Of a stretch of 59,857 bases of DNA, positions 33,658 to 59,857 are shown one piece after another. The notes beneath the pieces were generated by a model. It saw only the letters and a program-made list of their open reading frames with translations. It had not been told where the DNA came from and searched no databases. Source of the stretch: Schmidtea nova (taxonomy: Eukaryota); the NCBI GenBank assembly GCA_044892505.1, contig CM097882.1, forward strand, positions 364,068,144-364,128,000. The letters are read 5' to 3'. Position 1 is the first letter of the stretch; each line of letters opens with the position of its first letter. The translations under genes and the position numbers were made by a program.

Positions 33658-34596
33658 AAAGATCAAAGGTGAAAAAAAGATAATTATGATACTTTTATTA
33701 TAATCAATAATTACTTTTCTCCGAAATTTCTCTTTATTTTTGATAAAGTGAGTTTTTTACTATGGCATATGAATGAGTACAAATTATTAAATTGGAATTA
33801 AAAGATTCACAACCTTTTCTGAAATTAGGACATTTCAGAACAAAGCAATATTTAAGTGCGGCCATTTGGCAAGATGCGACCAATTTCTTTTTATTGTGCG
33901 GCCATTACCATTGTGATTAAAATATTAAAAAAATATTTTGTTACATTTTGTTTTCAGAAAATATTTATAGTAACAGATACCCGGTGAGAATTTAAAAAAC
34001 AAATTAAGAATCAGTAATACCCAACTGGAGTATCATTTGCTGGGATTATGGGTGGGTTCTAAATAATTAAAATAAATAGTTAATTATTAATTAAACGACT
34101 ATTGATGAGTACGTATACTAGGGATTCCACGCCCATAACCATACATAACATGACTACTACACGCGTATGCCCTTGCCTATTCCCTACTAGTCAAGTTGGT
34201 ACTGCATACGGTGGTGGAAAAATGATGGGCAGGTGAGCTTTGTTGCCAAAACTACTCCCCATTTATCTTCCCTCGGGTCCTTGCTGCCGATAGAAGGTCT
34301 TACGCAATTACATTCTATGGATGTTCGTCTCCCAATGAATTTTACACTATTTATCCTCATGAGTTATCACACGCTTTCCCCAATTGCCCTTTCCTTAACT
34401 GATCTACAAGGTAATTAATCAGTCTCTACGTAGAAACGGTCGGTCTGAGAAAAATACTGATGAGATTTTCGATTTCTAGGATTTAATTGAGTTATTTATT
34501 TTATTTAGTGAAGTCATACGATGAGAGACAAAATTTACACCAAAATACTTTTATTAAAATAATAAAAACAGGTTGTTATTTTACATCGATGTTTTC

Positions 34597-35181
34597 CTAC
34601 GCAAACTCCAGACTAATCTCCTGAATCAACTCCGCTTCGGTTAAGGAGTTCAAGTGGTGGATTTGCTCGTCCAGGCGCTTCGCAAATTCTCGGCGACGAC
34701 GACGCTGTCGCGATCCCATTCGTTGTTTTCGAAGCTGTTTGGTGAGTACAGGTACTGACGCCATTGTTCTCGATGGATCACTGAGAAAAGTAGGCAAGTC
34801 GGCTGTTACCAAAGTGGGGGCCATGATGATACCCTCTTCCGTCCCGCAAGCGACATCTTGATGAGTACTTTGTGTCCAGCGCTGAGCCGTGATCGGCCGG
34901 ATTAGCGCTCGTAATTCGGAGTCGATATAACTTCTTGTTACTGCATTTAGGCAATTTCGTAGTTCTCTCTGGACGGCATCTAGTTCCAATTTAGTTGCGG
35001 CCAGTGCTTCCTGCATTCGCTCAAGTTTTTTCGATTGGTCCTTCATTTGTTCGGGCGAGAACCACTTCGCTCTCAATTCATCATTGGCGACCGTGAGTCG
35101 CTTGATCTGCCGCTGCTGGTCCCTCAACTTCCTCTCTTGGATTTGTCCCATAATTTTCTTAGAATTTTCTGAAGTCGGCAT
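34597..35181 (-). CDS. LTR-embedded 194-aa protein: coiled coil plus Arg-rich motif
   Basis: ATG with CAG 5 nt upstream; AATAAA at 34550-34555; RKQRMGSRQRRRRRE; its last 42 nt recur at 59816-59857. Confidence 0.65.
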   Translation of the reverse strand: MPTSENSKKIMGQIQERKLRDQQRQIKRLTVANDELRAKWFSPEQMKDQSKKLERMQEALAATKLELDAVQRELRNCLNAVTRSYIDSELRALIRPITAQRWTQSTHQDVACGTEEGIIMAPTLVTADLPTFLSDPSRTMASVPVLTKQLRKQRMGSRQRRRRREFAKRLDEQIHHLNSLTEAELIQEISLEFA

Positions 35182-35509
35182 GTTGTCTGAATATTATAAC
35201 GATAAATTCGCTGGAGGACCTATCAACAATGTTATTTTATTTAGTCGACTATTTACTATTATTAAACGAGATGCATACTAATGTTTTTAATTATTGAGTT
35301 CTTTGCAAAATTATTTAACTATCTGATTATTGAAGGCTCAAAAGATTTAGTGAACTAATTTGATATTAGAAAATGGATTTCCTAATGACTATAACAACTA
35401 CAACACTGGATATTAATAAAGCTACAATACAACACTATTAACAAAATGAGACACTTCAGATTTCTCTAAAACATTTATTAAATTCAAAAACAGGTGGCCC
35501 TCGATTCAA

Positions 35510-35977
35510 CTATTCATCTTCGGTCATTTTTCCTCGATACGAAAATATCGATCTGATTTGCAAATTTGTGTTGATATTGGACGAGGCCTGCTGAAAACGG
35601 ATCCTCTCAGCTTCCCGAAGGGGTCGTATTGCTGTATGGAACTTGAACCCCAATTCCTTGAATGTAGAGGCTGGAATGAACCCCCAATATATTACACATC
35701 TCGGGAATCCTCGTTTATCTAGCATCAGAACGAACCAGGCGGCGTGCCATGATTCGAATTCCTCGTCTGGAATGATTGGCCAACTAGCACATCCCCGGTA
35801 CCATACGTGATGCCGTGGATGGTCCCATACTGTAAATGGACATGCGGTTTCAAGTTCTCGGCGCCATGCCCACATTTTTTGATGGATTTGTTGTAAAATC
35901 TCAAAAGGAGCCGGCTTTAACGGGCTAATTCGAGCTCGTTCTCGTCGCTTTTTGATGGTGAATCTGTGCTTAGTCAT
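35510..35977 (-). CDS. 155-aa Trp-rich protein of unknown function (probably within the LTR)
   Basis: ATG with TAG 4 nt upstream; AATAAA at 35474-35479; shares the 3' motif ACCTGTTTTT with the neighbouring ORF. Confidence 0.6.
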   Translation of the reverse strand: MTKHRFTIKKRRERARISPLKPAPFEILQQIHQKMWAWRRELETACPFTVWDHPRHHVWYRGCASWPIIPDEEFESWHAAWFVLMLDKRGFPRCVIYWGFIPASTFKELGFKFHTAIRPLREAERIRFQQASSNINTNLQIRSIFSYRGKMTEDE

Positions 35978-37513
35978 GATACTAGAACAATACTGAATTT
36001 TATAATAGTTAACAATTTAAATCAATTATTAAGTATAGTAGATGTTATCTCTCATCGTGATGCCTTTACTATTTGCCTTCCCCTTAGACCTTAGCTGAAA
36101 CCCAAAAAACTGTTGTTCACTACGGTATACATTACTCTCGTGTCTGCTTAGATCTATCTATTTATGATCGATAATATAGTCGGAAATTGGTGATTTGTCT
36201 GCGTGGGTATTGAAACACTGATACCTCAAAACGGAAACTCTCTCACGTCATGTATCTCCTAGCTTATTCGAAAAACGCTCTTTTGTATCAATTGCGGTCG
36301 ACCTAATTTTTAGAAGGTTTATTAGATGTTTATTTAGCAACTGTGCTGTGGTGAGGGTGAAAAATTGGGCCTCCTCACAGTCGAAAAATTCTTTCCTATC
36401 CTGCATCGTTAGATTTTATCTGAAAAATCGCCTCCTCGATAGCTAAGATGATTGAAATTAATTCCCCGGATTTGTTGGGTGTCCCATGTGCAAATCTCGA
36501 CCACTACCGATAGAATCATATTTGGTTATTTATTACTTTACCGTGTGTGGAGCCCTCGAGCACCACGCCACGGACTGACACCTTGGGAACCTAGAGCTCC
36601 CAACGGCGCAAAATTAATATATCAATATTTTTTACAATTAATCATAACAAGATTTAAATAATCAAAAATTTAATGATAACAAAAACATGCATAGTAAAAT
36701 CAATAAATCAAATTTTACCAAGTAATTCCACACAATTGATCTGATTAAGTTCGGTAGTAATACAATAGTCTGAATTAGTTTGGGGTCAAAATCGCAATCT
36801 AACAATGTCTGAATTTTTTGTCTCAACAAAAGTCTAAGTTGTACAAAGTCTAAATTTTAGTCTAAACTCTAGTCAAAAGTCTGATTTTATGAAAAATCTG
36901 ATCAGTATTTATACTGATCAGTCGTGTCTAGACCGACCAATCAAGTTCGGCCAGTTTCATGGTGGTTTTTAATTATTGTTTTTGATTCTAATTAATTTTT
37001 ATTTTTTAGATTGTATTCTTCCTTGGAGGTCCGGGTTTCCAAAAACAATTATTCAATAACAAGTACTTTTATTTGGTTTTAATTATTATTATTTGTATTT
37101 TATTTTGTTTTTAGATGTCTCCTGGGCCCGTTAATATCTAGAAATTCATTTATTTTTATTTATAGCTTGTACTTAGTTTATCTATATTTTAACTATATTA
37201 CTCCTTTCTTTTAACAAATAAATATTCCCCTTTTTACCTTATTTTTCTCTTTTTTGTTTTAATTAATCTACTTTTATTTCACTTTTCCCTCTATTTGGCT
37301 GGCCCAACATCACTCGGGGACCCCTAAAATTGCGTCCCGCAATTAATTATACATTTACACCTATATCATCATACATAAAAATTACGCAGATAAATGTCAA
37401 TTTACATATACACAAAGAATCACATAAGGTGATAGATTTTATACGTAAGCACAAAGTCATATTATTGTTAAATGTAAGTGGATCATATATACAGTGAATG
37501 TAATTTATCAGTT

Positions 37514-38086
37514 TTACACAAGCTCTTTGATTTCATGATTGGTATTGGATTGGATTGGGGTTCTTTCGCTGATTGTTCGTAGTTCGTAGAGGCTTTGGAT
37601 TCGGTTGAGATGTTTTCTCATTCGTTTTTGGGTTCTGATATCTGGTATTGTTGTTCGATTCAAGATGACTTGTTTTTGTTTTAGGATCTTTACTCGGTAG
37701 GATGTTATGAGGATTGTGATCGCGATAATGGTCACGCTGAGTGCAAGGATTATTATAATTGCGATGATCCATTTTTCTTGATATTCTATCTCTGCTTGGG
37801 CTAAGCTTTTTATGGGTTCTCGACCTTCTTTTAGGGTTTTTCTGATTGTTTTCAATTTGATTCGATGTTCATATAGGACCTGTTGAAATTTTTCGTCGTT
37901 TGGGTTGTCTAATGTTATCTGTTGAAGTTGGGTGATTTCTTGTGTTGCTTCGCTGATTAGTTTATCTAGCTCTTGATAGGTTTTCTCGGGTAGGGCTCGT
38001 AGCTCCTTCTCTGTGAGTTGAAGATCTTCTCTTTGTAGGGTGATTGTTATTAGGTATAAGAATATCGGTATTCTGAGCTTTTTCAT
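37514..38086 (-). CDS. 190-aa predicted type I membrane protein
   Basis: Signal-like N-terminus MKKLRIPIFLYLITITL; heptad-rich ectodomain; TM WIIAIIIILALSVTIIAITILITSY; basic cytoplasmic tail. Confidence 0.75.
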   Translation of the reverse strand: MKKLRIPIFLYLITITLQREDLQLTEKELRALPEKTYQELDKLISEATQEITQLQQITLDNPNDEKFQQVLYEHRIKLKTIRKTLKEGREPIKSLAQAEIEYQEKWIIAIIIILALSVTIIAITILITSYRVKILKQKQVILNRTTIPDIRTQKRMRKHLNRIQSLYELRTISERTPIQSNTNHEIKELV

Positions 38087-38168
38087 ACTGTTTTCTTTAT
38101 AGATAGGTCAATACAATTTGACACTACATTTCATATAATTATTTACAAAAATATATTTTCCGCTTTAT

Positions 38169-39230
38169 TTACACAATCGTCTCATTTGGTTCGTAGAAAC
38201 CTTCGTCCTGAGGCTCTACTTGGTTCGTGGGGAGTGGTATCCAAACAACCCTGCTCCTCCACATTTCGACTTCATCTCGATACATGTGAGATATCTGGAT
38301 CTCCTCGTCCAGCAAATATTCTAGGTAATTTGCTTGTTCTGTTAATGTTTCTATTTGCTTCTCTAATTCGATTACTTTTGTCTTTTGTTCGACTTCTTTC
38401 TTCATTTTTGTTACGGCTGCCGTTATACTTGCTTCTTTGGGTATTACTGATACTGTTACTCGTTTCTGTTTCAATTCTTCGTTTTCTTTCATCAAATTCG
38501 TTAAATTTTCCTCATAACTTTGTTTCTCTTCCTTTAATCTTTCTCTGGTTCTTTTTAGCTCTATTTTCTTCTGGGTAATCACTCCTTGATAACCATTTAT
38601 ATCTCTCTTCATCTCTTCTTCTTTCTGATTCCATATTCCGGTGAGCATAATTTTCAGTTGTTCTTGATTAGCTAGTTCTTCTCCCATTCTTTGAACTTGA
38701 TAGGTTAGTCCTTTAATTTTCTTTGCTTGTTCGCGGATAAATTGCTGTCTTTTTGTATTCCATCTTTTATTCAACACTTCTTGGTGTATTTTCTGTTCTA
38801 ACTCGTCTTTTAATTCGTCGATCTCTTTATATAATTTCCAGTCATCACTATAAGCTGTCCTTTCTATTATTTCTCTAGCTTTTTCGTAAGATTCTTTTGC
38901 TTCTTTCTTCCAGTATCTTGCTTGTTCTGTAATCGAATACATCTTGTGTTCAGCTTCCATCTGCTGTCTGTCTCTTTCCTCTCGTCGCTCTTTCATCATT
39001 CTCTGGTAATATTCCTTTTGTTGTTGTAGCATTTTGTATACTTCTTCTATTTTTTCTCGACTTCTTTGACTTGATCTTTCCGCTTCTTTTAATAATTCGG
39101 CTTGTCTCTCTACCTCCTCCTGCTTTCTATAATATGCATTGACCCATATTTCAATCTGTTCTAGATGATCGCTAATCGCTTCTGCTTGATGCATCGTAAT
39201 TTCCTGTAAGCATACTTCGATATTTCCCAT
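38169..39230 (-). CDS. 353-aa long coiled-coil protein
   Basis: E/K/Q/R-rich heptads throughout; the stop codon overlaps AATAAA (38164-38169). Confidence 0.8.
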   Translation of the reverse strand: MGNIEVCLQEITMHQAEAISDHLEQIEIWVNAYYRKQEEVERQAELLKEAERSSQRSREKIEEVYKMLQQQKEYYQRMMKERREERDRQQMEAEHKMYSITEQARYWKKEAKESYEKAREIIERTAYSDDWKLYKEIDELKDELEQKIHQEVLNKRWNTKRQQFIREQAKKIKGLTYQVQRMGEELANQEQLKIMLTGIWNQKEEEMKRDINGYQGVITQKKIELKRTRERLKEEKQSYEENLTNLMKENEELKQKRVTVSVIPKEASITAAVTKMKKEVEQKTKVIELEKQIETLTEQANYLEYLLDEEIQISHMYRDEVEMWRSRVVWIPLPTNQVEPQDEGFYEPNETIV

Positions 39231-39359
39231 TGCTATAATTACAGAAAATTTTTTTTTTTTTTTTTTTTTTTTAATCGGTTTATATATCAGTTATTTTTGT
39301 TTATATAATAATTTTTGGGTATTTAACTGTACATATTATTTACATGATCACTTCTCTTG

Positions 39360-40742
39360 TTACGTCAACCATCCTTTTCTATCCGCTTTCTCGTTCCTTT
39401 CCATTTCTATATATAAGGTGTCTGCATATAATCGTTCCCATAGGTTTTCTTTCGTTATAAACATCGGTTCTCCCGCTGCTAATCCACATTCTGTGGTTGG
39501 TTTCTCGCTCGTACTCGCATGTTTCTCTGTCTCAAAGAATTTTTCTACTGGTTTTGTTACACTTCTGATTCTTACAATGACTCCTACTTTCAAGGGCCAT
39601 TCTACTAGGTCGTCGTATTCTCCTTTACATAGCGAGAAAAATATTTACACATGTGTTCCCCGTCCTCTTCCGTCTCCATTTGGGTATAGCTTCAATCTCA
39701 CTTTAGCTCCGTTTCTCCATAAATAAAATGGTGGGCTTATTACTGCTGTTTTCGTCATGTTTCGGGCCTCTGTTAATTTGTCTCTAAAATCTGTCACTTT
39801 CCACACATATGGTGCTATTGGTAGCTTTTCCTCGGTATCCTGTGTGAGTTTGTTGTACTGGATTTTCATTCCTTTAGCCAATTCTTCAATAGCTTTTATC
39901 TTTTTCTCCATTTTTTCTCGTGTTAGTTCGAATTGCTCTCTGGTTTCCAACAGTAGGCTTACCATTATCTTGTGTGACTCTATTTCTCTTTCTAATTTTT
40001 TGATCGTTTGTTCGGTTTCTTTTGTTGCTTCGTTTGTCATTTCCGCATGCTTTAGCAATGCTTCCTCCAGATGTTGTTTCATGGTTTTTTGCGTTCTTTT
40101 CTCCATACATCCCTGTTTATTATAAGGGCATTCCCTTGGTTTCTCCGTGCACACTTTCCAATGTTCTTGTAATTTTACTTCTACCGTTATCTCGCATTCG
40201 TTTGAACATATTCCTACATATTGTCTACATACTTTCTCCTCTTTTACATTCAGGTGTTCTTCTTCGATCTTTCTCCTCGTTTCTCGAGTTCCACAATATT
40301 CGCATAGACTTTCCTCTTCTTTACATTCATCTTTGTGCTGCTCTTTATTCTTTATAGTTATTTTTTGTTGGCATTTGTTACATTCAGTTCTCTTCTCTTC
40401 GCAGTTCTCCAGATGGTTCTCGAGATCGCGTATTTGTCCTTGCCATATACATGGTTGATTAATACATTCGGTTTTCGTGTTCATGATTTCTCTCTGAGTT
40501 GCTCTATCTGGTCTGGTTTCTTCGAATTTTATTTGTCCTTCTTTGCATTCTGGACATTCTGGTGGTCTCTTCATACTTAACTCGTGTATGCATTTGGTAC
40601 ATACTCTGCATCCGCATAGGGTTTGTCTTGGTTTCAATATTATGTTTTTACAATTTACACAAGTGAGTCTCTGACTCCATTTCCTGTTCTCGGCTCTCAA
40701 AATTTCGATTCTCCGCTCTTCGGCTTTTCCTTCTGTATTCAT
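39360..40742 (-). CDS. TRAF-family protein (RING, TRAF zinc fingers, coiled coil, MATH), 460 codons with one in-frame TAA at 39645-39647
   Basis: CVNC...CGCRVC RING; CNKC/CEYC/CPYNKQGC fingers; the MATH domain YVWKVTDF...SPPFY...LYPNGDGRGRGTHV*IFFSLCKGEYDDLVEWP continues in frame into ORF 39360-39593. Confidence 0.9.
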
Positions 40743-40833
40743 TCTACAAAGATATATACACTTGATTTGTTATCTATTTTTTGATTTTTCTTGTTTTTTG
40801 TTTTACATATTTACAATTTTTCGCTTTATTTAT

Positions 40834-41190
40834 CTACGGCTCGTTTGTTGAATCTGGTTCTGGGTCATTTTCTGATCTGTTTATTGCCCAATTTGTCCAT
40901 CCATCCTCTGCTTCTTCTGTCTCTCCCATTGTTAAACGGTCTATCTCTATTGCTTGTCTCTGATTTATGTCGCTCATCACTTGATTCTCTCTGGTAAGTT
41001 GCGTTATCAATCTCTGTTGCTCCTCGATTCTGTGGAGTTGTTCAAAACTATTATTATAACTTTCGGATAACAAATTCTGTTTCTCAATTAACTGATTTTG
41101 TAGTGAGTTGATTGTTCGTATTAACATGTCACACTGGGCTTTCCATCGCATAGCCATAGTAGTTTCTGCTATTTCTTCCTGTTCGTTCAT
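40834..41190 (-). CDS. 118-aa coiled-coil protein of unknown function
   Basis: ATG with TAG 3 nt upstream; Q/E/L heptads; AATAAA at 40825-40830. Confidence 0.65.
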   Translation of the reverse strand: MNEQEEIAETTMAMRWKAQCDMLIRTINSLQNQLIEKQNLLSESYNNSFEQLHRIEEQQRLITQLTRENQVMSDINQRQAIEIDRLTMGETEEAEDGWTNWAINRSENDPEPDSTNEP

Positions 41191-49200: not shown

Positions 49201-52200
49201 TGGGTTCTGTACCCTTTCATTCTTTCCCATAGTCCTTTTCTCTCTTTCTTTAGTTGTTGTCTTGCTTGCTCGTTATTCATTATCTTTTTAAATTTTCGTC
49301 CCACTTCTTCATCGGTTCCTTTCATTTTTGCCAGTATTTTTAGGAGTCTTTTTATTCGGTGAATATCTTTTGAATGACCGTGTAATACCATTGTTTTAGC
49401 CAAAAATGGTAAGAATCCTACCACCAATTTCCAATTTACTTTCTTTTCTCGTTTATAGATGTCAAAACAGGCTAACATTTGCGTTATTATTACCCGTATT
49501 ATTTGTATAATTAGTATAACACCAAGTATACCTGCCATCATTTGTCCAAATATTAAAAATCTTCCCCACATCGCTTTCATCATGTTTTCCGTTGCCTTCT
49601 TAAAGTGGGCTGGTGACAATAATAATTCGTAATTTGGTCCACCTTGGTAATTTGTTCCTCCTGTTATTGTTACAATACTGGATAACACCGCTTCCCTTCT
49701 TGCTGGAAATAGTATGTTTTGTCTTGCTGCTTCTAAATCCTTTGCGCTATAGAATCCCATATTACTTACATCCACGTCTTTAAATTTTCGTCCTTTTGAT
49801 AGTTGCATCAATTCAAATTCCCTTGGTGCTGGTACCTCTGTTCTTGACGGAAACATAACCCAATTCCCGTCTGGTTTTTGGTATAGTGGTCCATATGCGT
49901 TGCTGCAATTGAAAGGGTTTGGTTCGAAGTTTACTGGATTTATGATTCTTGTCACTGGTTGCACATATCTTACTTTCCCTTTATATTCGATTTCTAGTTC
50001 GTTAGTACACTGACCTGGTTGTAGTTTTGTCATTGTCGCTACTTTCGCGTTTGTCTTTTTACATATGTATACGTACATGACCTCTCCGACTACCCTTCCA
50101 AAATGACCTTCTCTTAATGGTAATAGTGGCATTGCACTATCCGGGTTTGTGATTGCTACTGCTAGTTTTGTCTTTAATATTTCCCTATTTAATATACAAT
50201 CGTTATTTATTAAATCGTAATACACTTTTTGTAGTGACGCTTGTCCTCTATGGAATAGAAAATCCATTTTATTGTTCATGTAAAGGTGTAATTTAACATC
50301 GTTCGTGTGCACTTTGCGTTTCGCACTAGGTACTTCTTGTTTTGATACAAAAATGCCGGGGTAGTTGGTTTCCAACATGGCTACTCCGCATTTCAAGGCT
50401 GTTTTTCCTTTTACAAACCTCATTCCGATATCTGCATCTGAGGTAATTAGTACCGTTGGTGTATTTCTCATTTTAATTTGTTTTTCTTGTGTTCGGGTTT
50501 CAATCTTTTTCTCTCCCCGTACTGTGTCTTGAAGTATTTTTCCTCTTGCTGCCTCGTCTTCTTCTTCCTCTTGGAAGGTTTTCCCTTGTATCTCATCGAA
50601 TTCTGCTTCCTTTAGTAGTTGTAGTTGACATTCCTTTCCTCGTATCTGGTATGTTAGGGTTGACATACCCGTCTGACAAGTGTTTGACTCGATTTTGCAC
50701 ATTGGTAGGGTTTTCATTTCTCCCGTTGTTGGATCGAAGAATGTCTCGTACGTTTTTAATTCCACTGTATAAGTATCTATTACTACTAGGTTGGTTGCTG
50801 CTACTCCGAATATTGGATATGTTGCTCCTTGGCAATACCCTTCTCCTCCAGTAATAGCTCCTGCTACATAATATGTTTGTTGCAATATCACTCCCGTTTT
50901 TCCTCTTATCTTTACTCTATCTCTAGTCTCTACTTCTCCATGTTTGAATAATTTTTCACAGTCTTCTCCTTGCAGCATTACCGACTCTCTTTCCGTTCCT
51001 GGCATCACGATTGCTGAATAATGGCGGTGCCCACAATAAAAAGCAAATCTGGTTTTATAAACTTTGCATTCCCTGACCATTGTTCTTATCAGTTCCGCTT
51101 CCTGATATACGTGGTATAATTGCCTCTTTTTTAACGTTTTTAGTTCCGTTGGGGTTGCGTTTTTACATTGTTCTATCCCTCGTAATGAGTATTTTTCACC
51201 TAATGCCATTTGATCGCAATCGAATACTTCGAATGCTGTTGCGCCGTCAGTACTAATCATCCATATTAGCATCATCATAATGATGGAACTCAGGTTTAGT
51301 GTCGATTTTCCGTTTCCTGTTCCCGACTTTTCCTTTTCCAATTCTCCCAATATCTCTTCGAATTTCTTTTTCATATTTTCGGCTTGGTTTTTCTTTTGGT
51401 TTGTTTTTGTGAATATTTCCCATCCTCCTTTACTGATGATGTACGGTTCTATTTCCTTCTCTATAATTTTGGCTGTATTCTTTATATGTCTTTCAAGTGC
51501 TGTGGGTTTCAGTCGACCTCTACTCAGTGTCAGCAGATTGTAAATGGTGTATGCCATAGCTATTAAATATTTGTTATCCGTCTCTGCTCCTTCCGTTAAC
51601 TTCTTTATCAACATCGTGGTTCCTTGCCAATCTAGGTGGTTTGACCTTGTCTTTTCTTTTATTAGTTCTGGTAGGATTGGTGCGATGGCGCTATGCAGTG
51701 ATTTCGCCCTTTCGCTTATTTCGTTTATTCTCCACCATTTCTTTAATTCCGGATCGATTATTGCCAGTATTTCCATTAACATCTTTGATATCCATTCTTC
51801 GCCTTGGTATGTTTGTGTTGTTTCTTTTTCTTTCGTTTCGGCTATTTTATTTAGTTTCTTTAGACACAAATCCCATTGATTCCGTCTTTTTTCCTCTCTT
51901 GATTTTATAACTACATTTGCTGGATCCATCTTGGGTCTACCCCTAGGTCGTTTATCCATTGTCGTGCCCGTTTCTACTAATCTTGTTTCTCGTCCAGTTT
52001 TTTCTGTGACGTCTCTTGGTTCATTGGCTCTTTCTTCTAACCATCTTTCCATTTCTTGTGTGAATTGTACATTTTCTACATTTGCCCTCCTTGCTTCCTC
52101 TTCTGCTATTTCATTTACTTCTTCTATGATTATTTCTTGTTCGACTTCATCTTCGGTGTTGGTTACCGGTATTGCTGTTGGTAATTCTTGAATTCTTTCG

Positions 52201-53246: not shown

Positions 53247-53264
53247 TCTGATAACGTGGATGGT

Positions 53265-56200
53265 TTAGTGATTATCCCATATCCCAATTTTATATAGCCG
53301 TCTTTCATCGTGATCCCATAATACATGTTCATTATATTTCATGATTATGTCATCTTCCCATTCTTCTTCTGGTTCTCTTTGTAATAGTGTCTCGTTGATG
53401 ACATTTACTAGTTCTTTTATGGTACAATCTGCTACCACTTCAATTTCCTTGGTATCCTCATTAGGCAGTTCCACTGAAATTTTTAGATCTGTTATTTTTC
53501 CTTGTCTAAACATTGCTTTTCCCATTTTGGCAATTACTTTTCCGTATGAGATTTGTGACCATCTCGTGTGACTTGTGTCACGTATGCACTCGATACATCG
53601 TTTCAACTTCTCGTATTCGCTTCTCATTAACTCCTTTCTATGTTTTTTGATTTGTGGGATGATTTGCTCTATCATGGAATTTAGATTTCCTCGTAAGATT
53701 CGTTTTTTCTCATATTCTAACCGTGGTTTTATCTTCTTCTCGAAACACGTATTCGCTTCCTTTGCTACTTCTTGTAGGTTCTCTTCTCTCTTATCATCGT
53801 ATATCGATAATGTTGTCACCTCTCCTGGCCATATGCCTGTTTCTATCAAATGCGTCCTTTTCTTCACTAGTCCATTCTGTGAATAGAGGAATTTGTTCTT
53901 ATACGAACTCCCTAATCTGTCTTCTACCCATTGATAAATATCCTCCGTGAGTGGAGTTTTGATCCAAATCCTTGGCAAACATGTTTTTATCTGTATTAAG
54001 ATTATATATTCATGGAGTGGTTCTTTTAATAATTTTCCTACGTATTGGCTTAGTGTTTCTACTTCCCGGCCTGGTAACCACTCTTTATAGTTCATTTGTA
54101 ATATCGCTCTCATGAATTTCCGATAGTGTTTCTTGTCAATGAATTCCTCATTGTATATTACTTCTAGCGCATTATCTAGTAATTTCTCGATCTCGTCCTC
54201 TTTTACTTGAATAGTTTCTGGTGTCTTTACTACTTCTATCTTTTTGTCTTCAATTTCCGGTTCGTTTAGCATATCTCCGGCTAGACTACTGACGTCACTA
54301 TCCTCTTCGTCATCTGAAAAATTCTTTGCCTGGCCTCTCAACATGTTAATGTGTTTTATTTGGTTGATTTCACTTGGTGTATCTTCCGTTGGTCTTGTTT
54401 CACTTTTAATAGCTTTTTGTGTTGATTCACTCTTGTCGTCTACTACCTCGACCTTTCTCATTTTTCGTTCTAACTCGTCTATTTCTCCCAGCCGTCTTCG
54501 TATCATTTTCCCTTTAAATATTCGACTGATTCGTGTTTCGTGACGCACTGGCGGTGGAATTCCTTCTGGTTCTATTTCTTTGATTACCATCACATTTCTT
54601 TTTGTCTCTACTACTCCCATGTTTTCCCATATATCCGTTAGTTTCAATTTTACTTCTGGTGCACCTTCTATTTTTAGGAATGCTTCTCTGGGCAGTTTCG
54701 TTACTCCTGGAGCCATTTCATTCACTTTGTTGAACAATATTCCTACTTCTTCTTTTATGTTATATTGGAATCGAAACACGTGCTTGTTTGGCAAAATTAC
54801 CATCATTCCTCTTTTCCCGAGTTTCCATTTCTCTTCTTGGTTCCCTTCTTTTTCTACCTCCTTCTCTGTTTCTTTCTCTGCTTCTTCGCTTCCTGGTACT
54901 ATTTCTTTTCGACTTTCGTTATTGGTTGGATTCAGGTTTGTTGGATTTATTTCTGGCACAGTCTCTTTCTCGTGGGTATTTGTTTGATTGGTTGCTCTCA
55001 TCATATTAATTCTTAGAGGTTGTCGTTCTCTTTCTTGCTGTTTTTGTTCCTCTTCTCTTTGTATTCTTGCCCATTCCTGAGCATGTCGTGCTTGACTTTC
55101 CCGATTCAATCGTTTGTTTTCGCTTTCTATTTTTCTCATCATGTTGATTTGTTGTTGACCTGTTTGCGGATTTCCTCTGTTTGTATTGTTTATCTGCTCC
55201 GTCAATCTTTGAACCTCTTGCATTAAATGTATTTCTTTAGGGGTGTTTTTATTTTGGTTATTATTATTATTATTTTGCTGGTTTCCGTATTCCGGTCGGT
55301 TTCCATTATTTGGCTGATTCCCATAATTCGGTTGGTTTCCACCAGTTGGTTGGTTTCCAATATTCTGCCAGTTTCCTCGTTGATTGCTTCTTTGTCCGCA
55401 CTTTCTTGATAGGTGTCCAGGTCGTCCACAATTAAAACAGGTTATTGTGTAACATCTGCTCTCTGAATGTCCTTTTACTCCACATTTTCCACAATTCAAG
55501 TTCTGATAACATTCTTGTTGCCAATGTCCCAATTTCCCACATGTTTTGCATTGTTTCGTTGGTCCTTGGGGGTTGTAATTGCTTTGATTTCCGAAATTTG
55601 ATACTTTATTCCCTTCATTCCTTCGTTGCGGTGGTGGTCGGTTTAATTGTTGTGAATTTGGAATGTGGTTATTCAGGTTCACTTCTTGTTCGTTTTGTGC
55701 TGTATCCATAGCTAAATAGATTCTACCATCATTTCCTATCATGTGTAGTTCAAATCTATTAGCTGTTTCTAGTGCTTGGTCAATAGTTTTACACCCTTGA
55801 CATCCAACTTGCGCTCTTATGTCGGGTCTTCTTAATCCTCCCACAAAGATAGCTGCCATTAACTCCTCATTTATTGGGCTGTCTTGATTAAAGATCAACT
55901 TTGCTAACTTTTTCAATTCGCTTGCATATACCGCATTCGATTCATTTATCTTTTGTTTCCTCATTGAGAATTCCGTGAATGCCTCATTCAATACTTTATT
56001 TATTCCGAAGGTTTGTTGGAAAAAGTCCTTTATCGCTGACCAACTTGTAGGTGGATTAATTCCATTTTTTGCTTCCAAATATAGATCTAATGCGCTATCT
56101 TTTAAATATAGCTGAATTCTGCTTACAGTTGTTTCTGGTTTCCACTTGCATACTTCCACGAATATGCCAAATTCCTTTAAGAAAGTTTCCAATTTACTCG

Positions 56201-56750
56201 CATCTCCATTAAACGGTTCTCCGGAAAATTTGTCTTTTATTTCTTCTCTGGGTTCGCTCATTTCGATTCCGCTGTCTGTAGTTATTTTACTTTCGTTTCC
56301 TCTTGTTTCTAGTTCACTGTTATGTTCGTCACTCGAATTTATGTCGATCTCAGTTTCCTTTGCTGATTCGTTGTCCGATGCTTTACTATCGTTATCGGTA
56401 TCGTCACTTTCTGTTTCTTGTTCTACTTCGTCTTCTATTTCTTCTATATAATCGTTGTTGGTTTTGTCGACTTCTATTTCACTTATTGGGTTTCTCTCGG
56501 GTTCTGCTTGATTTTCTTTGTTGCTTGAACTGTTGCTTGTTACTGATAATTTATCGTTTTCGATAATCGATTTCTGTATTATTATCTTCCTCGCTTTACT
56601 TCCTTTTAGGCCTTTCTGCTTATTATTCTTGGTAGCTTTATTCTTTTCTGCTGGTTTTATTACCACACTATTTGGGTCCTCTTTGTTGATTTTACTGTCG
56701 ACTTTCTTCTCTGCTGGTTTTATTATGACACTCTTTTCTCCTTTTCTCAA
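53265..56750 (-). CDS. gag: Extended Gag, 1161 aa: acidic N-terminus, capsid, 3 CCHC knuckles, Q/N-rich tract, two ubiquitin-like domains
   Basis: Capsid about 55740-56230 (PFNGD...YLKDSAL...QKINES...FVGGL); CKTCGKLGHWQQEC, CGKCGVKGHSESRC and CFNCGRPGHLSRKC (55398-55550). The listed start is TTG; the first ATG is M164 at 56261. Confidence 0.93.
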   Translation of the reverse strand: MRKGEKSVIIKPAEKKVDSKINKEDPNSVVIKPAEKNKATKNNKQKGLKGSKARKIIIQKSIIENDKLSVTSNSSSNKENQAEPERNPISEIEVDKTNNDYIEEIEDEVEQETESDDTDNDSKASDNESAKETEIDINSSDEHNSELETRGNESKITTDSGIEMSEPREEIKDKFSGEPFNGDASKLETFLKEFGIFVEVCKWKPETTVSRIQLYLKDSALDLYLEAKNGINPPTSWSAIKDFFQQTFGINKVLNEAFTEFSMRKQKINESNAVYASELKKLAKLIFNQDSPINEELMAAIFVGGLRRPDIRAQVGCQGCKTIDQALETANRFELHMIGNDGRIYLAMDTAQNEQEVNLNNHIPNSQQLNRPPPQRRNEGNKVSNFGNQSNYNPQGPTKQCKTCGKLGHWQQECYQNLNCGKCGVKGHSESRCYTITCFNCGRPGHLSRKCGQRSNQRGNWQNIGNQPTGGNQPNYGNQPNNGNRPEYGNQQNNNNNNQNKNTPKEIHLMQEVQRLTEQINNTNRGNPQTGQQQINMMRKIESENKRLNRESQARHAQEWARIQREEEQKQQERERQPLRINMMRATNQTNTHEKETVPEINPTNLNPTNNESRKEIVPGSEEAEKETEKEVEKEGNQEEKWKLGKRGMMVILPNKHVFRFQYNIKEEVGILFNKVNEMAPGVTKLPREAFLKIEGAPEVKLKLTDIWENMGVVETKRNVMVIKEIEPEGIPPPVRHETRISRIFKGKMIRRRLGEIDELERKMRKVEVVDDKSESTQKAIKSETRPTEDTPSEINQIKHINMLRGQAKNFSDDEEDSDVSSLAGDMLNEPEIEDKKIEVVKTPETIQVKEDEIEKLLDNALEVIYNEEFIDKKHYRKFMRAILQMNYKEWLPGREVETLSQYVGKLLKEPLHEYIILIQIKTCLPRIWIKTPLTEDIYQWVEDRLGSSYKNKFLYSQNGLVKKRTHLIETGIWPGEVTTLSIYDDKREENLQEVAKEANTCFEKKIKPRLEYEKKRILRGNLNSMIEQIIPQIKKHRKELMRSEYEKLKRCIECIRDTSHTRWSQISYGKVIAKMGKAMFRQGKITDLKISVELPNEDTKEIEVVADCTIKELVNVINETLLQREPEEEWEDDIIMKYNEHVLWDHDERRLYKIGIWDNH

Positions 56751-57299
56751 CGGGATTACTTTTGTATACTCAATTTTCCTGTCTTATCGTATTCCGATTC
56801 TTTTCTTCCTTGGTTGCTTGGTTTGGTTTGATTGATTTATCTAAAATACAAATGTCACTTCAACGATACTCTATTGTTATCGTTGCGCTTTTATTCCCTT
56901 TTTACGGGACTTCTCATTACTGGGTTTCTATTATTTTTCCCCATTCCCAGATTCCCCTTTATTTAAGTCTATTTAAATTATCTATATACTAGTCACAATT
57001 ATCTATTTAGTCATAACAATTATCTATCGATTATTAAAATACATCCATTATTTTTCCCGCGGTCTCCCAATTTATTTGTCGTTCGAACGCTCTAATTCCC
57101 TGAGTCATTTGACTCGATTATTATTTTATCATCTCTTTATCTTTCTCTCTGCTAGCCTCTAATTATTAATTCTGCCGGTCTTTCCGGTCAGCTCCTATTT
57201 CTCAATTCTATTTGCATGCATTATTTTAGGTCGCATAATCCGCTTTACTCGCATTTCTCAATTATTGGTGCGCACTATTCTCATTATCGTCGACGATCA

Positions 57300-57525
57300 C
57301 AACTCTGGGCCTATATTCCCTCTGTTGTTATTTCTTATCCCTTGCAACCCTGGGCCTATATTCCCTCCGTTGCTATCTTCCTTTAATTTTAAATAATTGC
57401 AACCCTGGGCCTATATTCCCTCCGTTGGTGCTCAACAACTGTAACCCTGGGCTTATATTCCCTCCGTTACTATCTTCCTTTAATGTTAACTAATTGCAAC
57501 CCTGGGCCTATATTCCCTCCGTTGC
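57300..57525. repeat. Leader array A: 5 copies of AACCCTGGGCCTATATTCCCTCCGTTG
   Basis: Copies near 57301, 57346, 57401, 57443 and 57498. Confidence 0.92.
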
Positions 57526-57571
57526 TATATATCCGGATATCCCTATTGGCTCCTTTGGCCTCTAATCAATA

Positions 57572-57737
57572 TCAATTATCTCAAATGGCTCTTATGGCCT
57601 CAAATTCATATCTCAACTATCTCAAATGGCTCTATTGGCCTTAAATTCATATCTCAATTATCTCAAATGGCTCTATTGGCCTTAAATTCATATTTCAATT
57701 ATCTCAAATGGCTCTATTGGCCTTAAATCATATCTCT
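57572..57737. repeat. Leader array B: 4 x 41-bp tandem repeat
   Basis: Unit TCAATTATCTCAAATGGCTCTATTGGCCTTAAATTCATATC; three copies carry CCAAT on the minus strand. Confidence 0.92.
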
Positions 57738-57780
57738 CAATAACGCCTAGCTAGGTCATTCAATATGGCTCTTTGGCCTC

Positions 57781-57963
57781 AACCCTTTGTTTCAAGGGAC
57801 AAACCGCTGATAACCCTTTGTTTCAAGGGACAAATTCTAATAACCCTTTGTTTCAAGGGACAACCAGCTGATAACCCTTTGTTTCAAGGGACAAATTCTA
57901 ATAACCCTTTGTTTCAAGGGACAACCCGCTGATAACCCTTTGTTTCAAGGGACAAATTCTAAT
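57781..57963. repeat. Leader array C: 6 hairpin units AACCCTTTGTTTCAAGGGACAA with alternating 8-9 nt linkers
   Basis: Copies at 57781, 57812, 57842, 57873, 57903 and 57934; CCCTT/AAGGG stem. Confidence 0.95.
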
Positions 57964-58440
57964 AAATTTTCCTTAACCGGTTAATCGTAATTCTTAACTT
58001 CGCTAGCGACTACAATTTCTCAGCTGAGTTCTCTCAATTTCATGCGAGCTGATTATGCACCTCTTATTTTTCTCTATAATTCCTCGATTCTTTGTTTTAT
58101 TACTAATTCTTTCGCTGATCAGTCATAATTCAATTTTTATTATTTTCTCTGCGCGCATCTTACCTCATCAGGGTTTTCCCTATTTCTCTCCCCAACCAAA
58201 ATATACAAAAAGATCGCGTTGGTCTACTAATGCGGGATGTGGTGATCAATCACATCACAAAAGCTTTCCAACATTTGCGATTGGCCCCTTTCTATATACC
58301 CCGAGTGGGTTGATCAACTGGTACCTCCCAATGGGTGCTTAACGGACTACTTGACAGTAGCTCAAAAATTAATTAACATTGTTGATTGCTCCCCTGACTT
58401 TGTCATTCGATACAATATATTAACACACTCTAAATATTTA

Positions 58441-58902
58441 TTATAAATAAACTACAATTTTATCAGTTACAGAGAAATTGCACATGGGGCACTCATCACA
58501 CTTATTCGCACAGTTTTTACAGAATCGAAAATGTCCGCATGGTAGAAACATTATTTGGATTTCACTGTCTTCGCATATGTAACATTGTTTATATTGTTTT
58601 GCTGCCTCGACCCCTTGCGACATCCATCGGTTATATGTTAGACTTAACTGCTGTTCTATATGTCGGCATCTGATATTCAACTCGGCATCCTCTAATCGTG
58701 CTTTGTACCATTTATATCGCGTATTTATATCGAGTTTATTTACTTTCTCTATGATTTTTATTAACTCAGTTGTTTCCTCCGTTTGTGTCGTAGGTTCCTC
58801 ATATTCGGATGCTCTTATTCGGGTTATTTTTTCGCAGACTGTCTCAAATGTATCGTTCTCGGTGTTGAAAAATTCCTCGATTTCTTTCAGTTTTTCCTCC
58901 AT
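58441..58902 (-). CDS. 153-aa protein with a C-terminal IAP/MDM2-type RING finger (no BIR domain seen)
   Basis: CYIC...IMFLPCGHFRFCKNCANKCDECPMC; the stop codon overlaps AATAAA (58437-58442). Confidence 0.88.
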   Translation of the reverse strand: MEEKLKEIEEFFNTENDTFETVCEKITRIRASEYEEPTTQTEETTELIKIIEKVNKLDINTRYKWYKARLEDAELNIRCRHIEQQLSLTYNRWMSQGVEAAKQYKQCYICEDSEIQIMFLPCGHFRFCKNCANKCDECPMCNFSVTDKIVVYL

Positions 58903-59232
58903 TTCCTAGATAATTTATTTAAACACTGTGTTAATATTATTGGAAAAGTAGTACTGTGTTTCGTTTTCGACAGTTTATAGCCTCCCCCCGTGTTTCGATA
59001 AATTGTCGTCCCGACCTGTTATTTATAAATGCATTTATTTAATTTATCTATTTCATTGTGTTGTTGTTTTTATTTACTCAGTTTGTTTAATTCTCAGTTT
59101 ATAACTATCTATTTCCACGTAGCTCGCTTTCGTCTCGATTACTTATTCGGTTACTATTTTTCTCACGAAATTCTGATTTTTAAAACTTTCTGTTGTCGTT
59201 GGGTTCACATTTTCCGCATAAAAACAAAGTTG

Positions 59233-59250
59233 ATCCCAGCTGAGCCCCCA
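59233..59250 (-). promoter_or_regulatory. Primer-binding site, tRNA-Pro type
   Basis: TGGGGGCTCAGCTGGGAT matches the vertebrate tRNA-Pro PBS TGGGGGCTCGTCCGGGAT at 15 of 18 positions; 6 nt from the LTR end. Confidence 0.8.
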
Positions 59251-59256
59251 AATTTA

Positions 59257-59857
59257 TGCTGGGATTATGGGTGGGTTCTAAATAATTAAAATAAATAGTT
59301 AATTATTAATTAAACGACTATTGATGAGTACGTATACTAGGGATTCCACGCCCATAACCATACATAACATGACTACTACACGCGTATGCCCTTGCCTATT
59401 CCCTACTAGTCAAGTTGGTACTGCATACGGTGGTGGAAAAATGATGGGCAGGTGAGCTTTGTTGCCAAAACTACTCCCCATTTATCTTCCCTCGGGTCCT
59501 TGCTGCCGATAGAAGGTCTTACGCAATTACATTCTATGGATGTTCGTCTCCCAATGAATTTTACACTATTTATCCTCATGAGTTATCACACGCTTTCCCC
59601 AATTGCCCTTTCCTTAACTGATCTACAAGGTAATTAATCAGTCTCTACGTAGAAACGGTCGGTCTGAGAAAAATACTGATGAGATTTTCGATTTCTAGGA
59701 TTTAATTGAGTTATTTATTTTATTTAGTGAAGTCATACGATGAGAGACAAAATTTACACCAAAATACTTTTATTAAAATAATAAAAACAGGTTGTTATTT
59801 TACATCGATGTTTTCCTACGCAAACTCCAGACTAATCTCCTGAATCAACTCCGCTTC
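59257..59857 (-). repeat. 5' LTR (truncated by the window end)
   Basis: Identical by eye to 34038-34638; ends ...CAGCA next to the PBS. Confidence 0.95.

What the first reader, a model, noticed from the sequence alone, without database searches (positions are those of the whole stretch)
34038..59857. Young retrovirus-like giant Ty3/gypsy element of about 28 kb with a virus-style gene kit
Seen: LTR starts 25,219 bp apart, no difference spotted in 601 bp, a PBS, complete Gag and Pol motifs, an envelope domain, a second surface protein and at least 6 separate accessory ORFs. If the LTR ends at 37341, the element is about 28.5 kb. Known (from recall): giant Burro gypsy elements with Bcl-2-like and ankyrin cargo were described in Schmidtea. 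I do not recall an env or TRAF in them. Inference: this is a complex, possibly infectious endogenous virus lineage that pairs entry machinery with cell-death and ubiquitin modulators.
Basis: partly seen in the sequence, partly recalled or inferred. Interest (0 to 1): 0.95.

Follow-up and report, generated by a model that had tools for sequence, protein, structure and literature searches.

The report
Giant Burro-type gypsy provirus copy
This is a real, recently inserted copy of a giant retrovirus-like "gypsy" element that carries an envelope gene and captured host signalling genes. Its kind (planarian Burro elements, flatworm gag-env-pol errantiviruses) is already published, and this copy has four premature stop codons.

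Summary
A minus-strand LTR element fills 34038-59857. The two visible LTR pieces are identical over 601 bp and start 25,219 bp apart. It has a tRNA-type primer site, a gag with three zinc knuckles, Ty3-like PR-RT-RNaseH-IN, and an envelope domain in frame between gag and pol. The envelope is a class III fusogen (herpes gB / chuvirus G type) with its own signal-like segment and membrane anchor. Cargo comprises an IAP-type RING protein, a full TRAF homologue followed by a pure A24 tract, two ankyrin blocks, a four-FN3 membrane-protein module, and coiled-coil and small membrane ORFs.

The architecture is published. Burro/GYPSM1 giant gypsy elements of planarians have in-frame env, MATH-TRAF, RING and ankyrin, and were proposed to be proviruses. 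Platyhelminth GAG-ENV-POL errantiviruses have gB-type Env.

The copy is not intact. It has four in-frame stops and no frameshift. One stop lies inside the TRAF MATH domain. Three lie within a 5,152-codon one-frame gag-env-pol chain, a reading frame that three metagenomic relatives keep uninterrupted.

LTR length, element size (25.8-28.5 kb), target-site duplication and host species could not be established. Verdict: new member of a known kind, modest interest.

The parts
34038..37341 (-). 3' LTR. The outer end (34038, ...CA) is certain and 34038-34638 is proven repeat. The inner end is provisional, with candidates at 37341, 37309 and 37281.
   Evidence: Identity to 59257-59857. The composition of 34639-37340 matches the proven LTR piece and differs from the coding part. 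Candidate starts are listed.
59257..59857 (-). 5' LTR, last 601 bp only; it runs off the window.
   Evidence: 601/601 identity to 34038-34638.
59232..59250 (-). Primer-binding-site-like 19-mer beginning TGG, 6 nt inside the 5' LTR.
   Evidence: Read directly. The cognate tRNA was not identified, and there is no tRNA gene in the window.
58441..58902 (-). Upstream accessory ORF, 153 aa, with a C-terminal IAP-type RING and no BIR.
   Evidence: Pfam zf-C3HC4_3, 5.5e-12. The closest solved structures are the XIAP/cIAP RINGs, 1.7e-11.
57343..57965 (.). Three tandem-repeat arrays in the leader between the RING ORF and gag (units of 97, 41 and 31/61 nt).
   Evidence: Tandem repeats are drawn in the published Burro map.
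41316..56783 (-). ORF1 chain: one reading frame of 5,152 codons (gag - unknown region - env - PR - RT - RNase H - IN - ankyrin - FN3 x4 - membrane anchor). It is interrupted by three in-frame stops and no frameshift. The longest open stretch is 3,333 codons.
   Evidence: Relatives keep gag-env-pol as one uninterrupted ORF.
55398..56261 (-). Gag core: first ATG, capsid-like region and three CCHC zinc knuckles.
   Evidence: Pfam Retrotrans_gag (sub-threshold, 19.3 bits) and zf-CCHC. Three knuckles by pattern. Retroviral nucleocapsid hits in PDB.
49473..51302 (-). Envelope: signal-like hydrophobic segment, ectodomain of about 565 aa with 14 Cys, and membrane anchor. Class III fusogen.
   Evidence: PF24664, 1.2e-71. 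Hydropathy and Cys count. Foldseek against PDB: the 50 hits listed are 49 herpes gB and one baculovirus GP64, best 4.7e-7. Foldseek against BFVD: chuvirus, xinmovirus and nyavirus glycoproteins down to 8.5e-24. The model itself is of low confidence.
48627..48899 (-). Aspartic protease.
   Evidence: Pfam RVP, 6.5e-8. The DTG motif was read.
46911..47963 (-). Reverse transcriptase and RNase H, Ty3 type.
   Evidence: Pfam RVT_1, 8.7e-37, and RT_RNaseH, 2e-38. YIDD motif. Ty3 RT structures 4ol8/7q5b at 1e-83.
46014..46586 (-). Integrase (H2C2 zinc finger and DD35E core).
   Evidence: Pfam Integrase_H2C2, 3.5e-22, and rve, 1e-9. Motifs checked.
43920..45206 (-). Two ankyrin-repeat blocks downstream of integrase.
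   Evidence: Pfam Ank_2, 1.1e-14. Second block by PDB ankyrin hits, 3.8e-15.
41808..43235 (-). Four tandem fibronectin-type-III modules (18 Cys), preceded by a signal-like hydrophobic run.
   Evidence: Module alignment. AF2 module model, pLDDT 77. All 50 listed Foldseek PDB hits are FN3 domains, TM 0.46-0.60. The only library relative is an FN3-repeat protein.
41493..41561 (-). Membrane-spanning segment downstream of the FN3 modules, in the same frame.
   Evidence: Hydropathy 2.65. Sequence read.
40834..41190 (-). 118-aa coiled-coil-like ORF, in a different frame, with no family match.
39360..40742 (-). TRAF homologue (RING, TRAF zinc fingers, MATH/TRAF-C). It is intronless and broken by one in-frame stop.
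   Evidence: Pfam zf-TRAF and MATH, split over two adjacent same-frame stretches. TRAF6/5/2 RING-zinc-finger and TRAF2 TRAF-C structures at 3.5e-11 to 1e-9.
39249..39272 (-). Pure A24 tract about 90 nt after the TRAF stop. It is the only A-run of 11 or more in the element.
38169..39230 (-). 353-aa Glu/Lys-rich coiled-coil ORF with no family match.
37514..38086 (-). 190-aa ORF with a signal-like N-terminus and one strong membrane segment (small type I membrane protein).
   Evidence: Hydropathy 3.16. Sequence read.
34597..35977 (-). Two ORFs (194 and 155 aa) in GC-rich islands inside the presumed LTR. Their coding status is doubtful.
   Evidence: There are no family matches. The first ORF overlaps the proven LTR piece by 42 nt.

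Best explanation
This is a recently integrated copy of a Burro-type giant Ty3/gypsy endogenous retrovirus, that is, the flatworm GAG-ENV-POL errantivirus lineage. It sits on the minus strand and is coding-defective.

Shown:
- LTR-PBS-leader, then one very long reading frame in the order gag, envelope, PR-RT-RNaseH-IN, ankyrin, FN3 module.
- One upstream accessory gene (RING) and several downstream ones (TRAF, coiled-coil, small membrane protein).

Inferred mechanism:
1. Transcription starts in the 5' LTR and a tRNA primes reverse transcription.
2. ORF1 is made as a polytopic polyprotein.
3. An internal signal-like segment takes the class III envelope ectodomain into the ER while gag stays cytosolic.
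4. The envelope anchor returns the chain to the cytosol, so Pol hangs from the envelope tail until the protease frees it.
5. A second signal/anchor pair would display the FN3 module.
6. The RING E3, the TRAF homologue and the ankyrin blocks are captured host-type modules that would act on ubiquitin and TRAF signalling.
7. The TRAF gene looks like a retro-captured, polyadenylated host mRNA.

This particular copy carries four nonsense interruptions and no frameshift. These were probably inherited from a defective template that was copied with proteins supplied by other copies.
For: - Anatomy.
- Ty3-type RT.
- Env family, topology and fold.
- Same gene order and same-frame gag-env-pol in seven metagenomic relatives at 26-49% identity.
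- Uninterrupted ORF1 of 2,693-3,700 aa in three relatives.
- Hydrophobic pair 553-590 aa apart flanking the env ectodomain in all, and a second pair near the C-end of ORF1.
- MATH domain split by one stop.
- Signal-like run of the FN3 module straddles the preceding stop, and its anchor lies beyond the next stop.
- No read-through motif or structure after any of the four stops (3 TAA, 1 TGA).
- LTR identity 601/601.
- A24 after TRAF.
- Published Burro description matches in env position, three knuckles, RING, MATH-TRAF, ankyrin, leader tandem repeats and giant ORF1 of 4,873-5,140 aa.
Against: - No Burro sequence could be compared directly, and the host species is unknown. Exact products are not on record and nothing above 45% identity exists in the protein collection.
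- BIR, Bcl-2 and dUTPase, reported in Burro, are not detectable here, and a ubiquitin-like domain is detectable only weakly.
- TRAF sits downstream of pol, unlike both published arrangements.
- Total length is at most about 28.5 kb, below the published '>30 kb'.
- Three of the four stops could be genuine gene ends. Each is followed within 20 codons by an ATG.
- Four nonsense changes alongside identical LTR pieces is only marginally compatible with decay after insertion.
- The polytopic processing scheme is inference from hydropathy only.
- The env model is of low confidence (pLDDT 48.7).
Confidence: 0.75

Rival explanations
1. The copy is intact and potentially still a working, possibly infectious provirus. 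On this view the in-frame stops are designed: a gag terminator with occasional read-through, as in gammaretroviruses, and true ends of separate accessory genes.
For: - All catalytic motifs are intact and there is a 3,333-codon open stretch.
- An ATG follows each stop within 20 codons.
- The LTR pieces are identical.
- Two relatives also show in-frame stops without frameshifts.
Against: - One stop cuts a MATH domain in two.
- There is no read-through context or downstream structure, and three of the four stops are TAA.
- Three relatives have no stop anywhere between gag and the end of pol.
- The signal-like run of the FN3 module is incomplete when counted from its first ATG.
Confidence: 0.12
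2. The locus is an assembly chimera or a pile of nested insertions, not one element.
For: - Giant repeats are hard to assemble.
- An N run lies about 870 bp from the element's end.
- Only part of one LTR is visible.
Against: - There are no N runs inside the element.
- Base composition is uniform over all internal ORFs.
- A single frame runs for 15.5 kb.
- No internal LTR-like or inverted repeats occur apart from the leader arrays.
- No second RT, IN or transposase is present.
- The gene order is colinear with relatives.
Confidence: 0.04
3. It is a separate lineage that only resembles Burro: a cargo-rich GAG-ENV-POL errantivirus from another flatworm group or another phylum that became giant independently.
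For: - The cargo set and positions differ from the published Burro-1 and Girardia elements.
- GAG-ENV-POL elements are reported to be polyphyletic.
- The nearest relatives found are only 26-49% identical and much smaller.
Against: - It has three CCHC knuckles, leader tandem repeats, RING, MATH-TRAF, ankyrin and an ORF1 chain of about 5,000 codons, exactly as described for Burro.
- The flank is more than 70% A+T, as in Schmidtea.
Confidence: 0.2

Closest known systems
Burro-1 to -4 / GYPSM1 giant gypsy elements of Schmidtea mediterranea and the Burro-like element of Girardia (Dugesia) tigrina (Jurka 2007; Grohme et al. 2018; Arkhipova and Yushenova 2019, PMC6431247)
   Same: - Giant LTR element of Ty3/gypsy type.
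- ORF1 of about 5,000 codons starting with gag and three CCHC knuckles.
- Env in frame between gag and PR.
- RING, MATH-TRAF and ankyrin cargo.
- Leader tandem repeats and accessory ORFs.
- AT-rich host genome.
   Different: - TRAF is a separate downstream gene here. It lies inside ORF1 in Burro-1 and upstream in Girardia.
- No BIR, Bcl-2 or dUTPase is detectable.
- An FN3 x4 membrane module and a small membrane ORF are present, which the review does not mention.
- Total length is at most 28.5 kb.
- Direct sequence comparison was not possible.
Platyhelminth GAG-ENV-POL errantiviruses with HSV/gB-type Env (eLife 2026, PMC13524379)
   Same: Ty3/gypsy Pol, GAG-ENV-POL order and a class III gB-type envelope.
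   Different: That survey does not describe giant size or host-gene cargo. Whether it includes this family could not be checked, because its supplements are not held.
Metagenomic relatives found here (L001-L007; ENA ERZ25039515, JGI 3300013315, Ga0209893, Ga0316208)
   Same: - Gag, env (PF24664), PR, RT, RH and IN all in one frame.
- A hydrophobic pair flanking the env ectodomain.
- About 180-220 conserved residues after IN.
- Identity of 26-49%.
   Different: - ORF1 is only 2,693-3,700 aa.
- No RING, TRAF or FN3 homologues were found on these (partial) contigs.
- Three of them (L001, L004, L005) carry a downstream ORF with a weak, near-threshold RNase_T-type exonuclease match instead.
Glycoproteins of chuviruses, xinmoviruses and nyaviruses (Pfam Monjiviricetes_fusion), and herpesvirus gB / baculovirus GP64
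   Same: Same Pfam family (242 bits). They are the best structural matches and share the signal-ectodomain-anchor layout.
   Different: Only 15-19% identity to the viral proteins. Here the protein is embedded in a retroelement polyprotein rather than being a free gene.
Host-gene capture by retroviruses and LTR elements through read-through or template switching on polyadenylated mRNA (established knowledge: acutely transforming retroviruses, maize Bs1)
   Same: An intronless host-type gene (TRAF) followed by a short 3' UTR and a pure poly(A) tract inside the element.
   Different: - No donor host gene has been identified.
- The composition of the TRAF gene is already that of the element.
- No canonical AATAAA lies just upstream of the tract.

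Membership tests
Ty3/gypsy (Metaviridae) LTR retroelement | Pol order PR-RT-RNaseH-IN with a Ty3-like RT | tested here: met
   Pfam domain order. Ty3 RT structures are the best hit at 1e-83, far ahead of retroviral RTs at about 1e-30.
Ty3/gypsy (Metaviridae) LTR retroelement | Two LTRs ending TG...CA, with a PBS next to the 5' LTR and a polypurine tract next to the 3' LTR | tested here: inconclusive
   The outer LTR end (CA) and the PBS-like site are seen. The inner LTR start and PPT are not fixed; there are three candidates. The 5' LTR is truncated.
Burro family (planarian giant gypsy) | Giant size: interior up to 25 kb and total above 30 kb | tested here: inconclusive
   The interior is about 21.9 kb if the LTR is 3.3 kb. 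Total length is 25.8-28.5 kb. This is giant, but below the published maximum.
Burro family (planarian giant gypsy) | ORF1 of about 4,900-5,100 aa beginning with gag and 2-3 CCHC knuckles | tested here: met
   A 5,152-codon one-frame chain with three knuckles. In this copy it is interrupted three times.
Burro family (planarian giant gypsy) | Env in frame between gag and protease | tested here: met
   PF24664 lies at aa 924-1265 of the giant ORF and PR at 1450.
Burro family (planarian giant gypsy) | Cargo domains RING/AIR1, MATH_TRAF_C and ankyrin | tested here: met
Burro family (planarian giant gypsy) | Cargo domains BIR, BCL2-like, dUTPase-like and SUMO/ubiquitin-like | tested here: not met
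   None was found at Pfam E of 1 or below, or in PDB searches of the relevant pieces. There is only a weak ubiquitin-like hit (E 0.089). These domains vary between Burro members, so the failure lowers the membership claim but does not exclude it.
Burro family (planarian giant gypsy) | Sequence similarity to the Burro/GYPSM1 reference entries, and a dugesiid host | not testable with these tools
   No Burro sequence or planarian genome is reachable. The Grohme et al. paper and the relevant supplements are not held.
GAG-ENV-POL errantiviruses with gB-type Env | Env of class III fold placed between gag and pol | tested here: met
   The structural model is of low confidence, but the Pfam match is strong.
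Class III viral fusion glycoproteins | Signal peptide, large Cys-rich ectodomain and single C-terminal anchor | tested here: met
   Hydrophobic segments at aa ~650 and ~1240 of the giant ORF, with 14 Cys between them. Eight Cys are invariant among six homologues.
Class III viral fusion glycoproteins | Trimeric fusogen with internal fusion loops, and fusion activity | not tested
   No multimer model and no assay.
TRAF family | N-terminal RING, TRAF zinc fingers and C-terminal MATH/TRAF-C | tested here: met
   The reading frame is interrupted once.
IAP family | At least one BIR domain | tested here: not met
   The 153-aa ORF has only the IAP-type RING. It is not an IAP.

The most novel reading that the evidence does not exclude
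Beyond the published picture, two things may be true of Burro-type elements.
1. They may be actively collecting host genes by retro-capture of polyadenylated mRNAs. The TRAF homologue with an intact A24 tract would be a fresh example. TRAF sits at three different places in three described elements.
2. Their ORF1 may be a polytopic polyprotein that threads two different surface modules through the ER membrane with host signal peptidase, in the manner of RNA-virus structural polyproteins. The two modules are a class III fusogen and a four-FN3 adhesin-like protein.
Probability: 0.3. Interest if true: 0.6.

Novelty: new member of a known kind. Interest (0 to 1): 0.35.

Why it matters
The element shows how far an LTR retroelement can grow towards a complex virus: an entry protein, a second surface module and host-signalling cargo sit in one reading frame of more than 5,000 codons. 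That picture is already in the literature for planarian Burro elements, so this finding is mainly a well-preserved additional example. Three details added here are modest but testable leads on how such elements express an internal envelope and acquire cargo. They are the class III fold of env with a conserved internal signal/anchor pair, the FN3 membrane module, and the poly(A) tract behind the TRAF gene.

Tried and rejected
- Exact-product look-ups for two ORFs: not on record.
- Homologue searches: the env region within the whole giant ORF, and the 650 aa before env, found nothing. The exhaustive search with the FN3 ORF gave one weak hit.
- PDB sequence searches of the orphan regions found nothing. 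A profile of the env alignment against PDB found nothing.
- Pfam and NCBIfam at lenient thresholds found no BIR, Bcl-2, dUTPase or SUMO.
- Rfam and tRNA scans of the window were empty.
- IMG/VR scan for env relatives found none.
- Profile comparison of the FN3 modules with the C-terminal modules of relatives showed no similarity.
- Attempts to identify the family or species through the literature failed. Grohme et al. 2018 is not held, the BURRO1 probe/primer table is not held, and the eLife supplements are not held.
- The inner LTR boundary could not be fixed from the window alone.
- Programmed read-through was considered and not supported.
- An alternative genetic code was considered and rejected, because 3,333 codons are free of all three stop codons.
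- Slip to report: while reasoning about the gag / giant-ORF junction I recalled the C-terminal sequence of ubiquitin from memory. I replaced it with a Pfam test of the two pieces apart, which gave only a weak ubiquitin-like hit.

Full report
**1. Observation**

The window contains one long direct repeat. Positions 34038-34638 and 59257-59857 are identical at 601 of 601 positions, and the identity ends exactly at the left edge of both copies. The second copy runs off the window, so only 601 bp of the LTR pair is visible. No target-site duplication can be read.

The stretch between the copies differs sharply from the flank. GC is 35-41% against 21-31%, and the plus strand is strongly T-rich (AT skew -0.3 to -0.47). 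The genes are therefore on the minus strand.

In that orientation the 5' LTR ends in CA at 59257. Six bases later comes a 19-nt TGG-initiated primer-binding-like site at 59232-59250. No tRNA gene or Rfam family is present in the window.

**2. Gene content**

Minus-strand ORFs and Pfam give the following order.

- A 153-aa ORF whose C-terminal RING is closest to the XIAP/cIAP RINGs. It has no BIR.
- A 1.6-kb leader with three tandem-repeat arrays.
- Gag, with a weak capsid match and three CCHC knuckles.
- About 1,360 residues with no detectable family.
- An envelope domain, Pfam Monjiviricetes_fusion, 242 bits against a cut-off of 27.
- Protease, then RT (YIDD), RNase H, and integrase (HHCC, DD35E).
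- Two ankyrin blocks.
- A Cys-rich stretch made of four tandem modules of about 95 aa each.
- A membrane-spanning segment.

Downstream, in the same or other frames, lie four more ORFs.

- A 118-aa coiled-coil ORF.
- A complete TRAF homologue: RING and zinc fingers like TRAF6/5/2, zf-TRAF, and MATH/TRAF-C.
- A 353-aa coiled-coil ORF.
- A 190-aa ORF with a signal-like start and one strong membrane segment.

RT-RNase H matches the solved Ty3 enzyme at 1e-83, against about 1e-30 for retroviral RTs. That places the element in Ty3/gypsy.

**3. Envelope**

The env region has the layout of a type I glycoprotein.

- A hydrophobic signal-like segment lies near residue 650 of the giant ORF.
- An ectodomain of about 565 residues follows, with 14 cysteines.
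- A strong anchor lies near residue 1240.
- A tail of about 190 residues runs into the protease.

An AlphaFold model built on six sequences is poor overall (pLDDT 48.7), with one confident beta-rich block. Even so, Foldseek gave 62 PDB matches at E of 0.001 or below. The 50 that are listed are 49 herpesvirus gB entries and one baculovirus GP64. The best matches among viral models are chuvirus, xinmovirus and nyavirus glycoproteins, down to 8.5e-24.

Together with the strong Pfam hit, this makes env a class III fusogen. That agrees with the 'HSV/gB-type' Env reported for platyhelminth GAG-ENV-POL elements.

**4. The second surface protein**

The four modules share invariant Cys, Trp and Tyr positions. 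A module model reaches pLDDT 77. All 50 listed PDB matches are fibronectin type III domains, with TM 0.46-0.60.

The only relative in 1.8 billion representative proteins is a bacterial FN3/Ig-repeat protein, at E 3.9e-4.

A signal-like hydrophobic run precedes the modules and a membrane anchor follows them.

**5. State of the copy**

Gag, the giant ORF, the FN3 stretch and the anchor stretch all lie in one reading frame. Each is separated from the next by a single stop, giving 5,152 codons with three in-frame stops and no frameshift.

The TRAF gene is likewise split. The Pfam MATH match is divided between two adjacent same-frame stretches, which is a certain interruption.

For the other three stops the evidence is indirect.

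- The signal-like run of the FN3 module begins right after a stop and is too short when counted from the first ATG.
- Its anchor lies beyond the next stop.
- The end of gag gives a weak, truncated ubiquitin-like hit.

None of the four stops (three TAA, one TGA) has a known read-through context or unusual downstream structure.

The relatives give the most direct evidence. Seven metagenomic loci share the arrangement. Five of them can be checked along the gag-env-pol frame.

- Three have a completely uninterrupted gag-env-pol ORF of 2,693-3,700 aa.
- Two have one and three in-frame stops respectively, again without frameshifts.

I therefore read this copy as carrying four nonsense interruptions: one in TRAF and three in ORF1.

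Decay after insertion fits poorly with zero differences in 601 bp of LTR pair. The stops were more likely present in the template RNA.

One more oddity: the gag frame is open for 174 codons upstream of its first ATG. This is unexplained.

**6. How it probably works (inference)**

In the window and in the three relatives with an uninterrupted ORF1, a hydrophobic pair 553-590 residues apart flanks the env ectodomain. A second pair lies near the C-terminal end of ORF1.

This suggests a polytopic polyprotein.

- Gag and the unknown region stay cytosolic.
- The internal signal inserts env into the ER.
- The anchor returns the chain to the cytosol.
- Pol is then tethered to the envelope tail until the protease acts.
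- A second signal/anchor pair displays the C-terminal module.

The RING E3, the TRAF homologue and the ankyrin blocks would act on host ubiquitin and TRAF signalling.

The TRAF gene is intronless. About 90 nt after its stop comes a pure A24 tract, the only A-run of 11 or more in the element. This looks like the tail of a captured host mRNA. Two points weaken that reading: the gene's base composition is already that of the element, and no canonical poly(A) signal lies just upstream of the tract.

**7. Comparison with what is known**

Arkhipova and Yushenova 2019 (PMC6431247) summarise Burro (Grohme et al. 2018) and its earlier description as GYPSM1 (Jurka 2007). Their account covers:

- LTR elements above 30 kb;
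- an ORF1 of 4,873 aa (5,140 aa in Girardia tigrina) that begins with gag and three (or two) CCHC knuckles;
- AIR1/RING, Smc, MATH_TRAF_C, BIR, ankyrin, BCL2-like, SUMO-like and dUTPase-like motifs;
- tandem repeats and accessory ORFs;
- an env in frame between gag and pol, with hits to mononegavirus glycoproteins;
- the explicit proposals that these are integrated proviruses and that they tinker with apoptosis and ubiquitination.

BURRO1 is expressed in planarian intestine and is held down by PIWI (PMC8532177).

Differences here are:

- the position of TRAF (downstream of pol);
- no detectable BIR, Bcl-2 or dUTPase;
- the FN3 module;
- a total length of at most 28.5 kb.

Direct comparison with Burro sequences and identification of the host were not possible.

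**8. LTR length and size**

The inner end of the 3' LTR cannot be proven from the window.

- Composition changes from coding-like to LTR-like between about 37,600 and 37,200.
- The stretch 34639-37340 has the composition of the proven LTR piece.
- TG sites at 37341, 37309 and 37281 are all plausible starts. The site at 37281 has the best purine run before it.

The element is thus at least 25,820 bp and probably about 28.5 kb.

Two ORFs of 155 and 194 aa lie in GC-rich islands inside this stretch. They have no family match and uncertain status.

**9. Chimera check**

- There are no N runs inside the element.
- Composition is uniform over all internal ORFs.
- One frame runs for 15.5 kb.
- There are no internal long repeats apart from the leader arrays.
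- No second set of replication genes is present.
- The gene order is colinear with relatives.

A chimera or nested insertion is unlikely.

**10. Verdict**

The element is real and well preserved, but it is a member of a published kind and this copy is defective. Novelty: new member of a known kind. Interest is about 0.35, resting on the class III env topology, the FN3 module and the poly(A)-tailed TRAF cargo as leads.

Slip to report: in my reasoning I recalled ubiquitin's C-terminal sequence from memory. I used none of it and replaced it with the Pfam test.

Noticed in passing
window 8602-10434 (-): An intact 610-aa hAT-type transposase ORF (BED zinc finger plus hAT dimerisation domain) in the flank.
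   Followed up: partly
window 31062-31801: Short ORFs with a Tc1/mariner-type (Sleeping Beauty-like) HTH domain, probably a decayed DNA transposon.
   Followed up: partly
window 17826-19392: Tandem repeats of 306 bp and 188 bp. They are bracketed by two arrays of the same 19-nt unit in opposite orientation (18430-18485 and 19299-19392), around a 125-aa ORF. This may be a foldback or TIR-type element.
   Followed up: no
window 33494-33623: A 61-nt inverted repeat, 97% complementary with an 8-nt loop, about 400 bp from the element's end. An N run (33034-33166) lies just beyond it and was left untouched.
   Followed up: no
window 39249-39272 (-): A pure A24 tract directly after the TRAF gene's short 3' region and 19 nt before the next ORF's ATG. 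It looks like the tail of a captured mRNA.
   Followed up: partly
window 56262-56783 (-): The gag reading frame stays open for 174 codons upstream of its first ATG. That is too long to be chance in this A-rich sequence, and how gag starts is unexplained.
   Followed up: no
window 34597-35977 (-): Two ORFs (194 and 155 aa) sit in GC-rich islands (47-50% GC) inside the presumed 3.3-kb LTR. The first overlaps the proven LTR piece.
   Followed up: partly
L001 7920-9260; L004 12169-13473; L005 10617-12107: Three metagenomic relatives carry a downstream ORF with a weak RNase_T-type (DEDD) exonuclease match. Only the L005 match passes the Pfam cut-off. This cargo is absent from the window's element.
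   Followed up: partly
L003 320-8050; L006 262-4257: Two relatives show the same decay pattern as the window: in-frame stops (three and one) and no frameshift. This hints at a substitution-biased mutation process in this lineage.
   Followed up: partly
L004, L005, L007 (C-terminal 300-400 aa of ORF1): A second pair of hydrophobic segments lies near the end of ORF1 in relatives, at the position of the window's FN3-plus-anchor module. No detectable sequence similarity to that module was found.
   Followed up: partly
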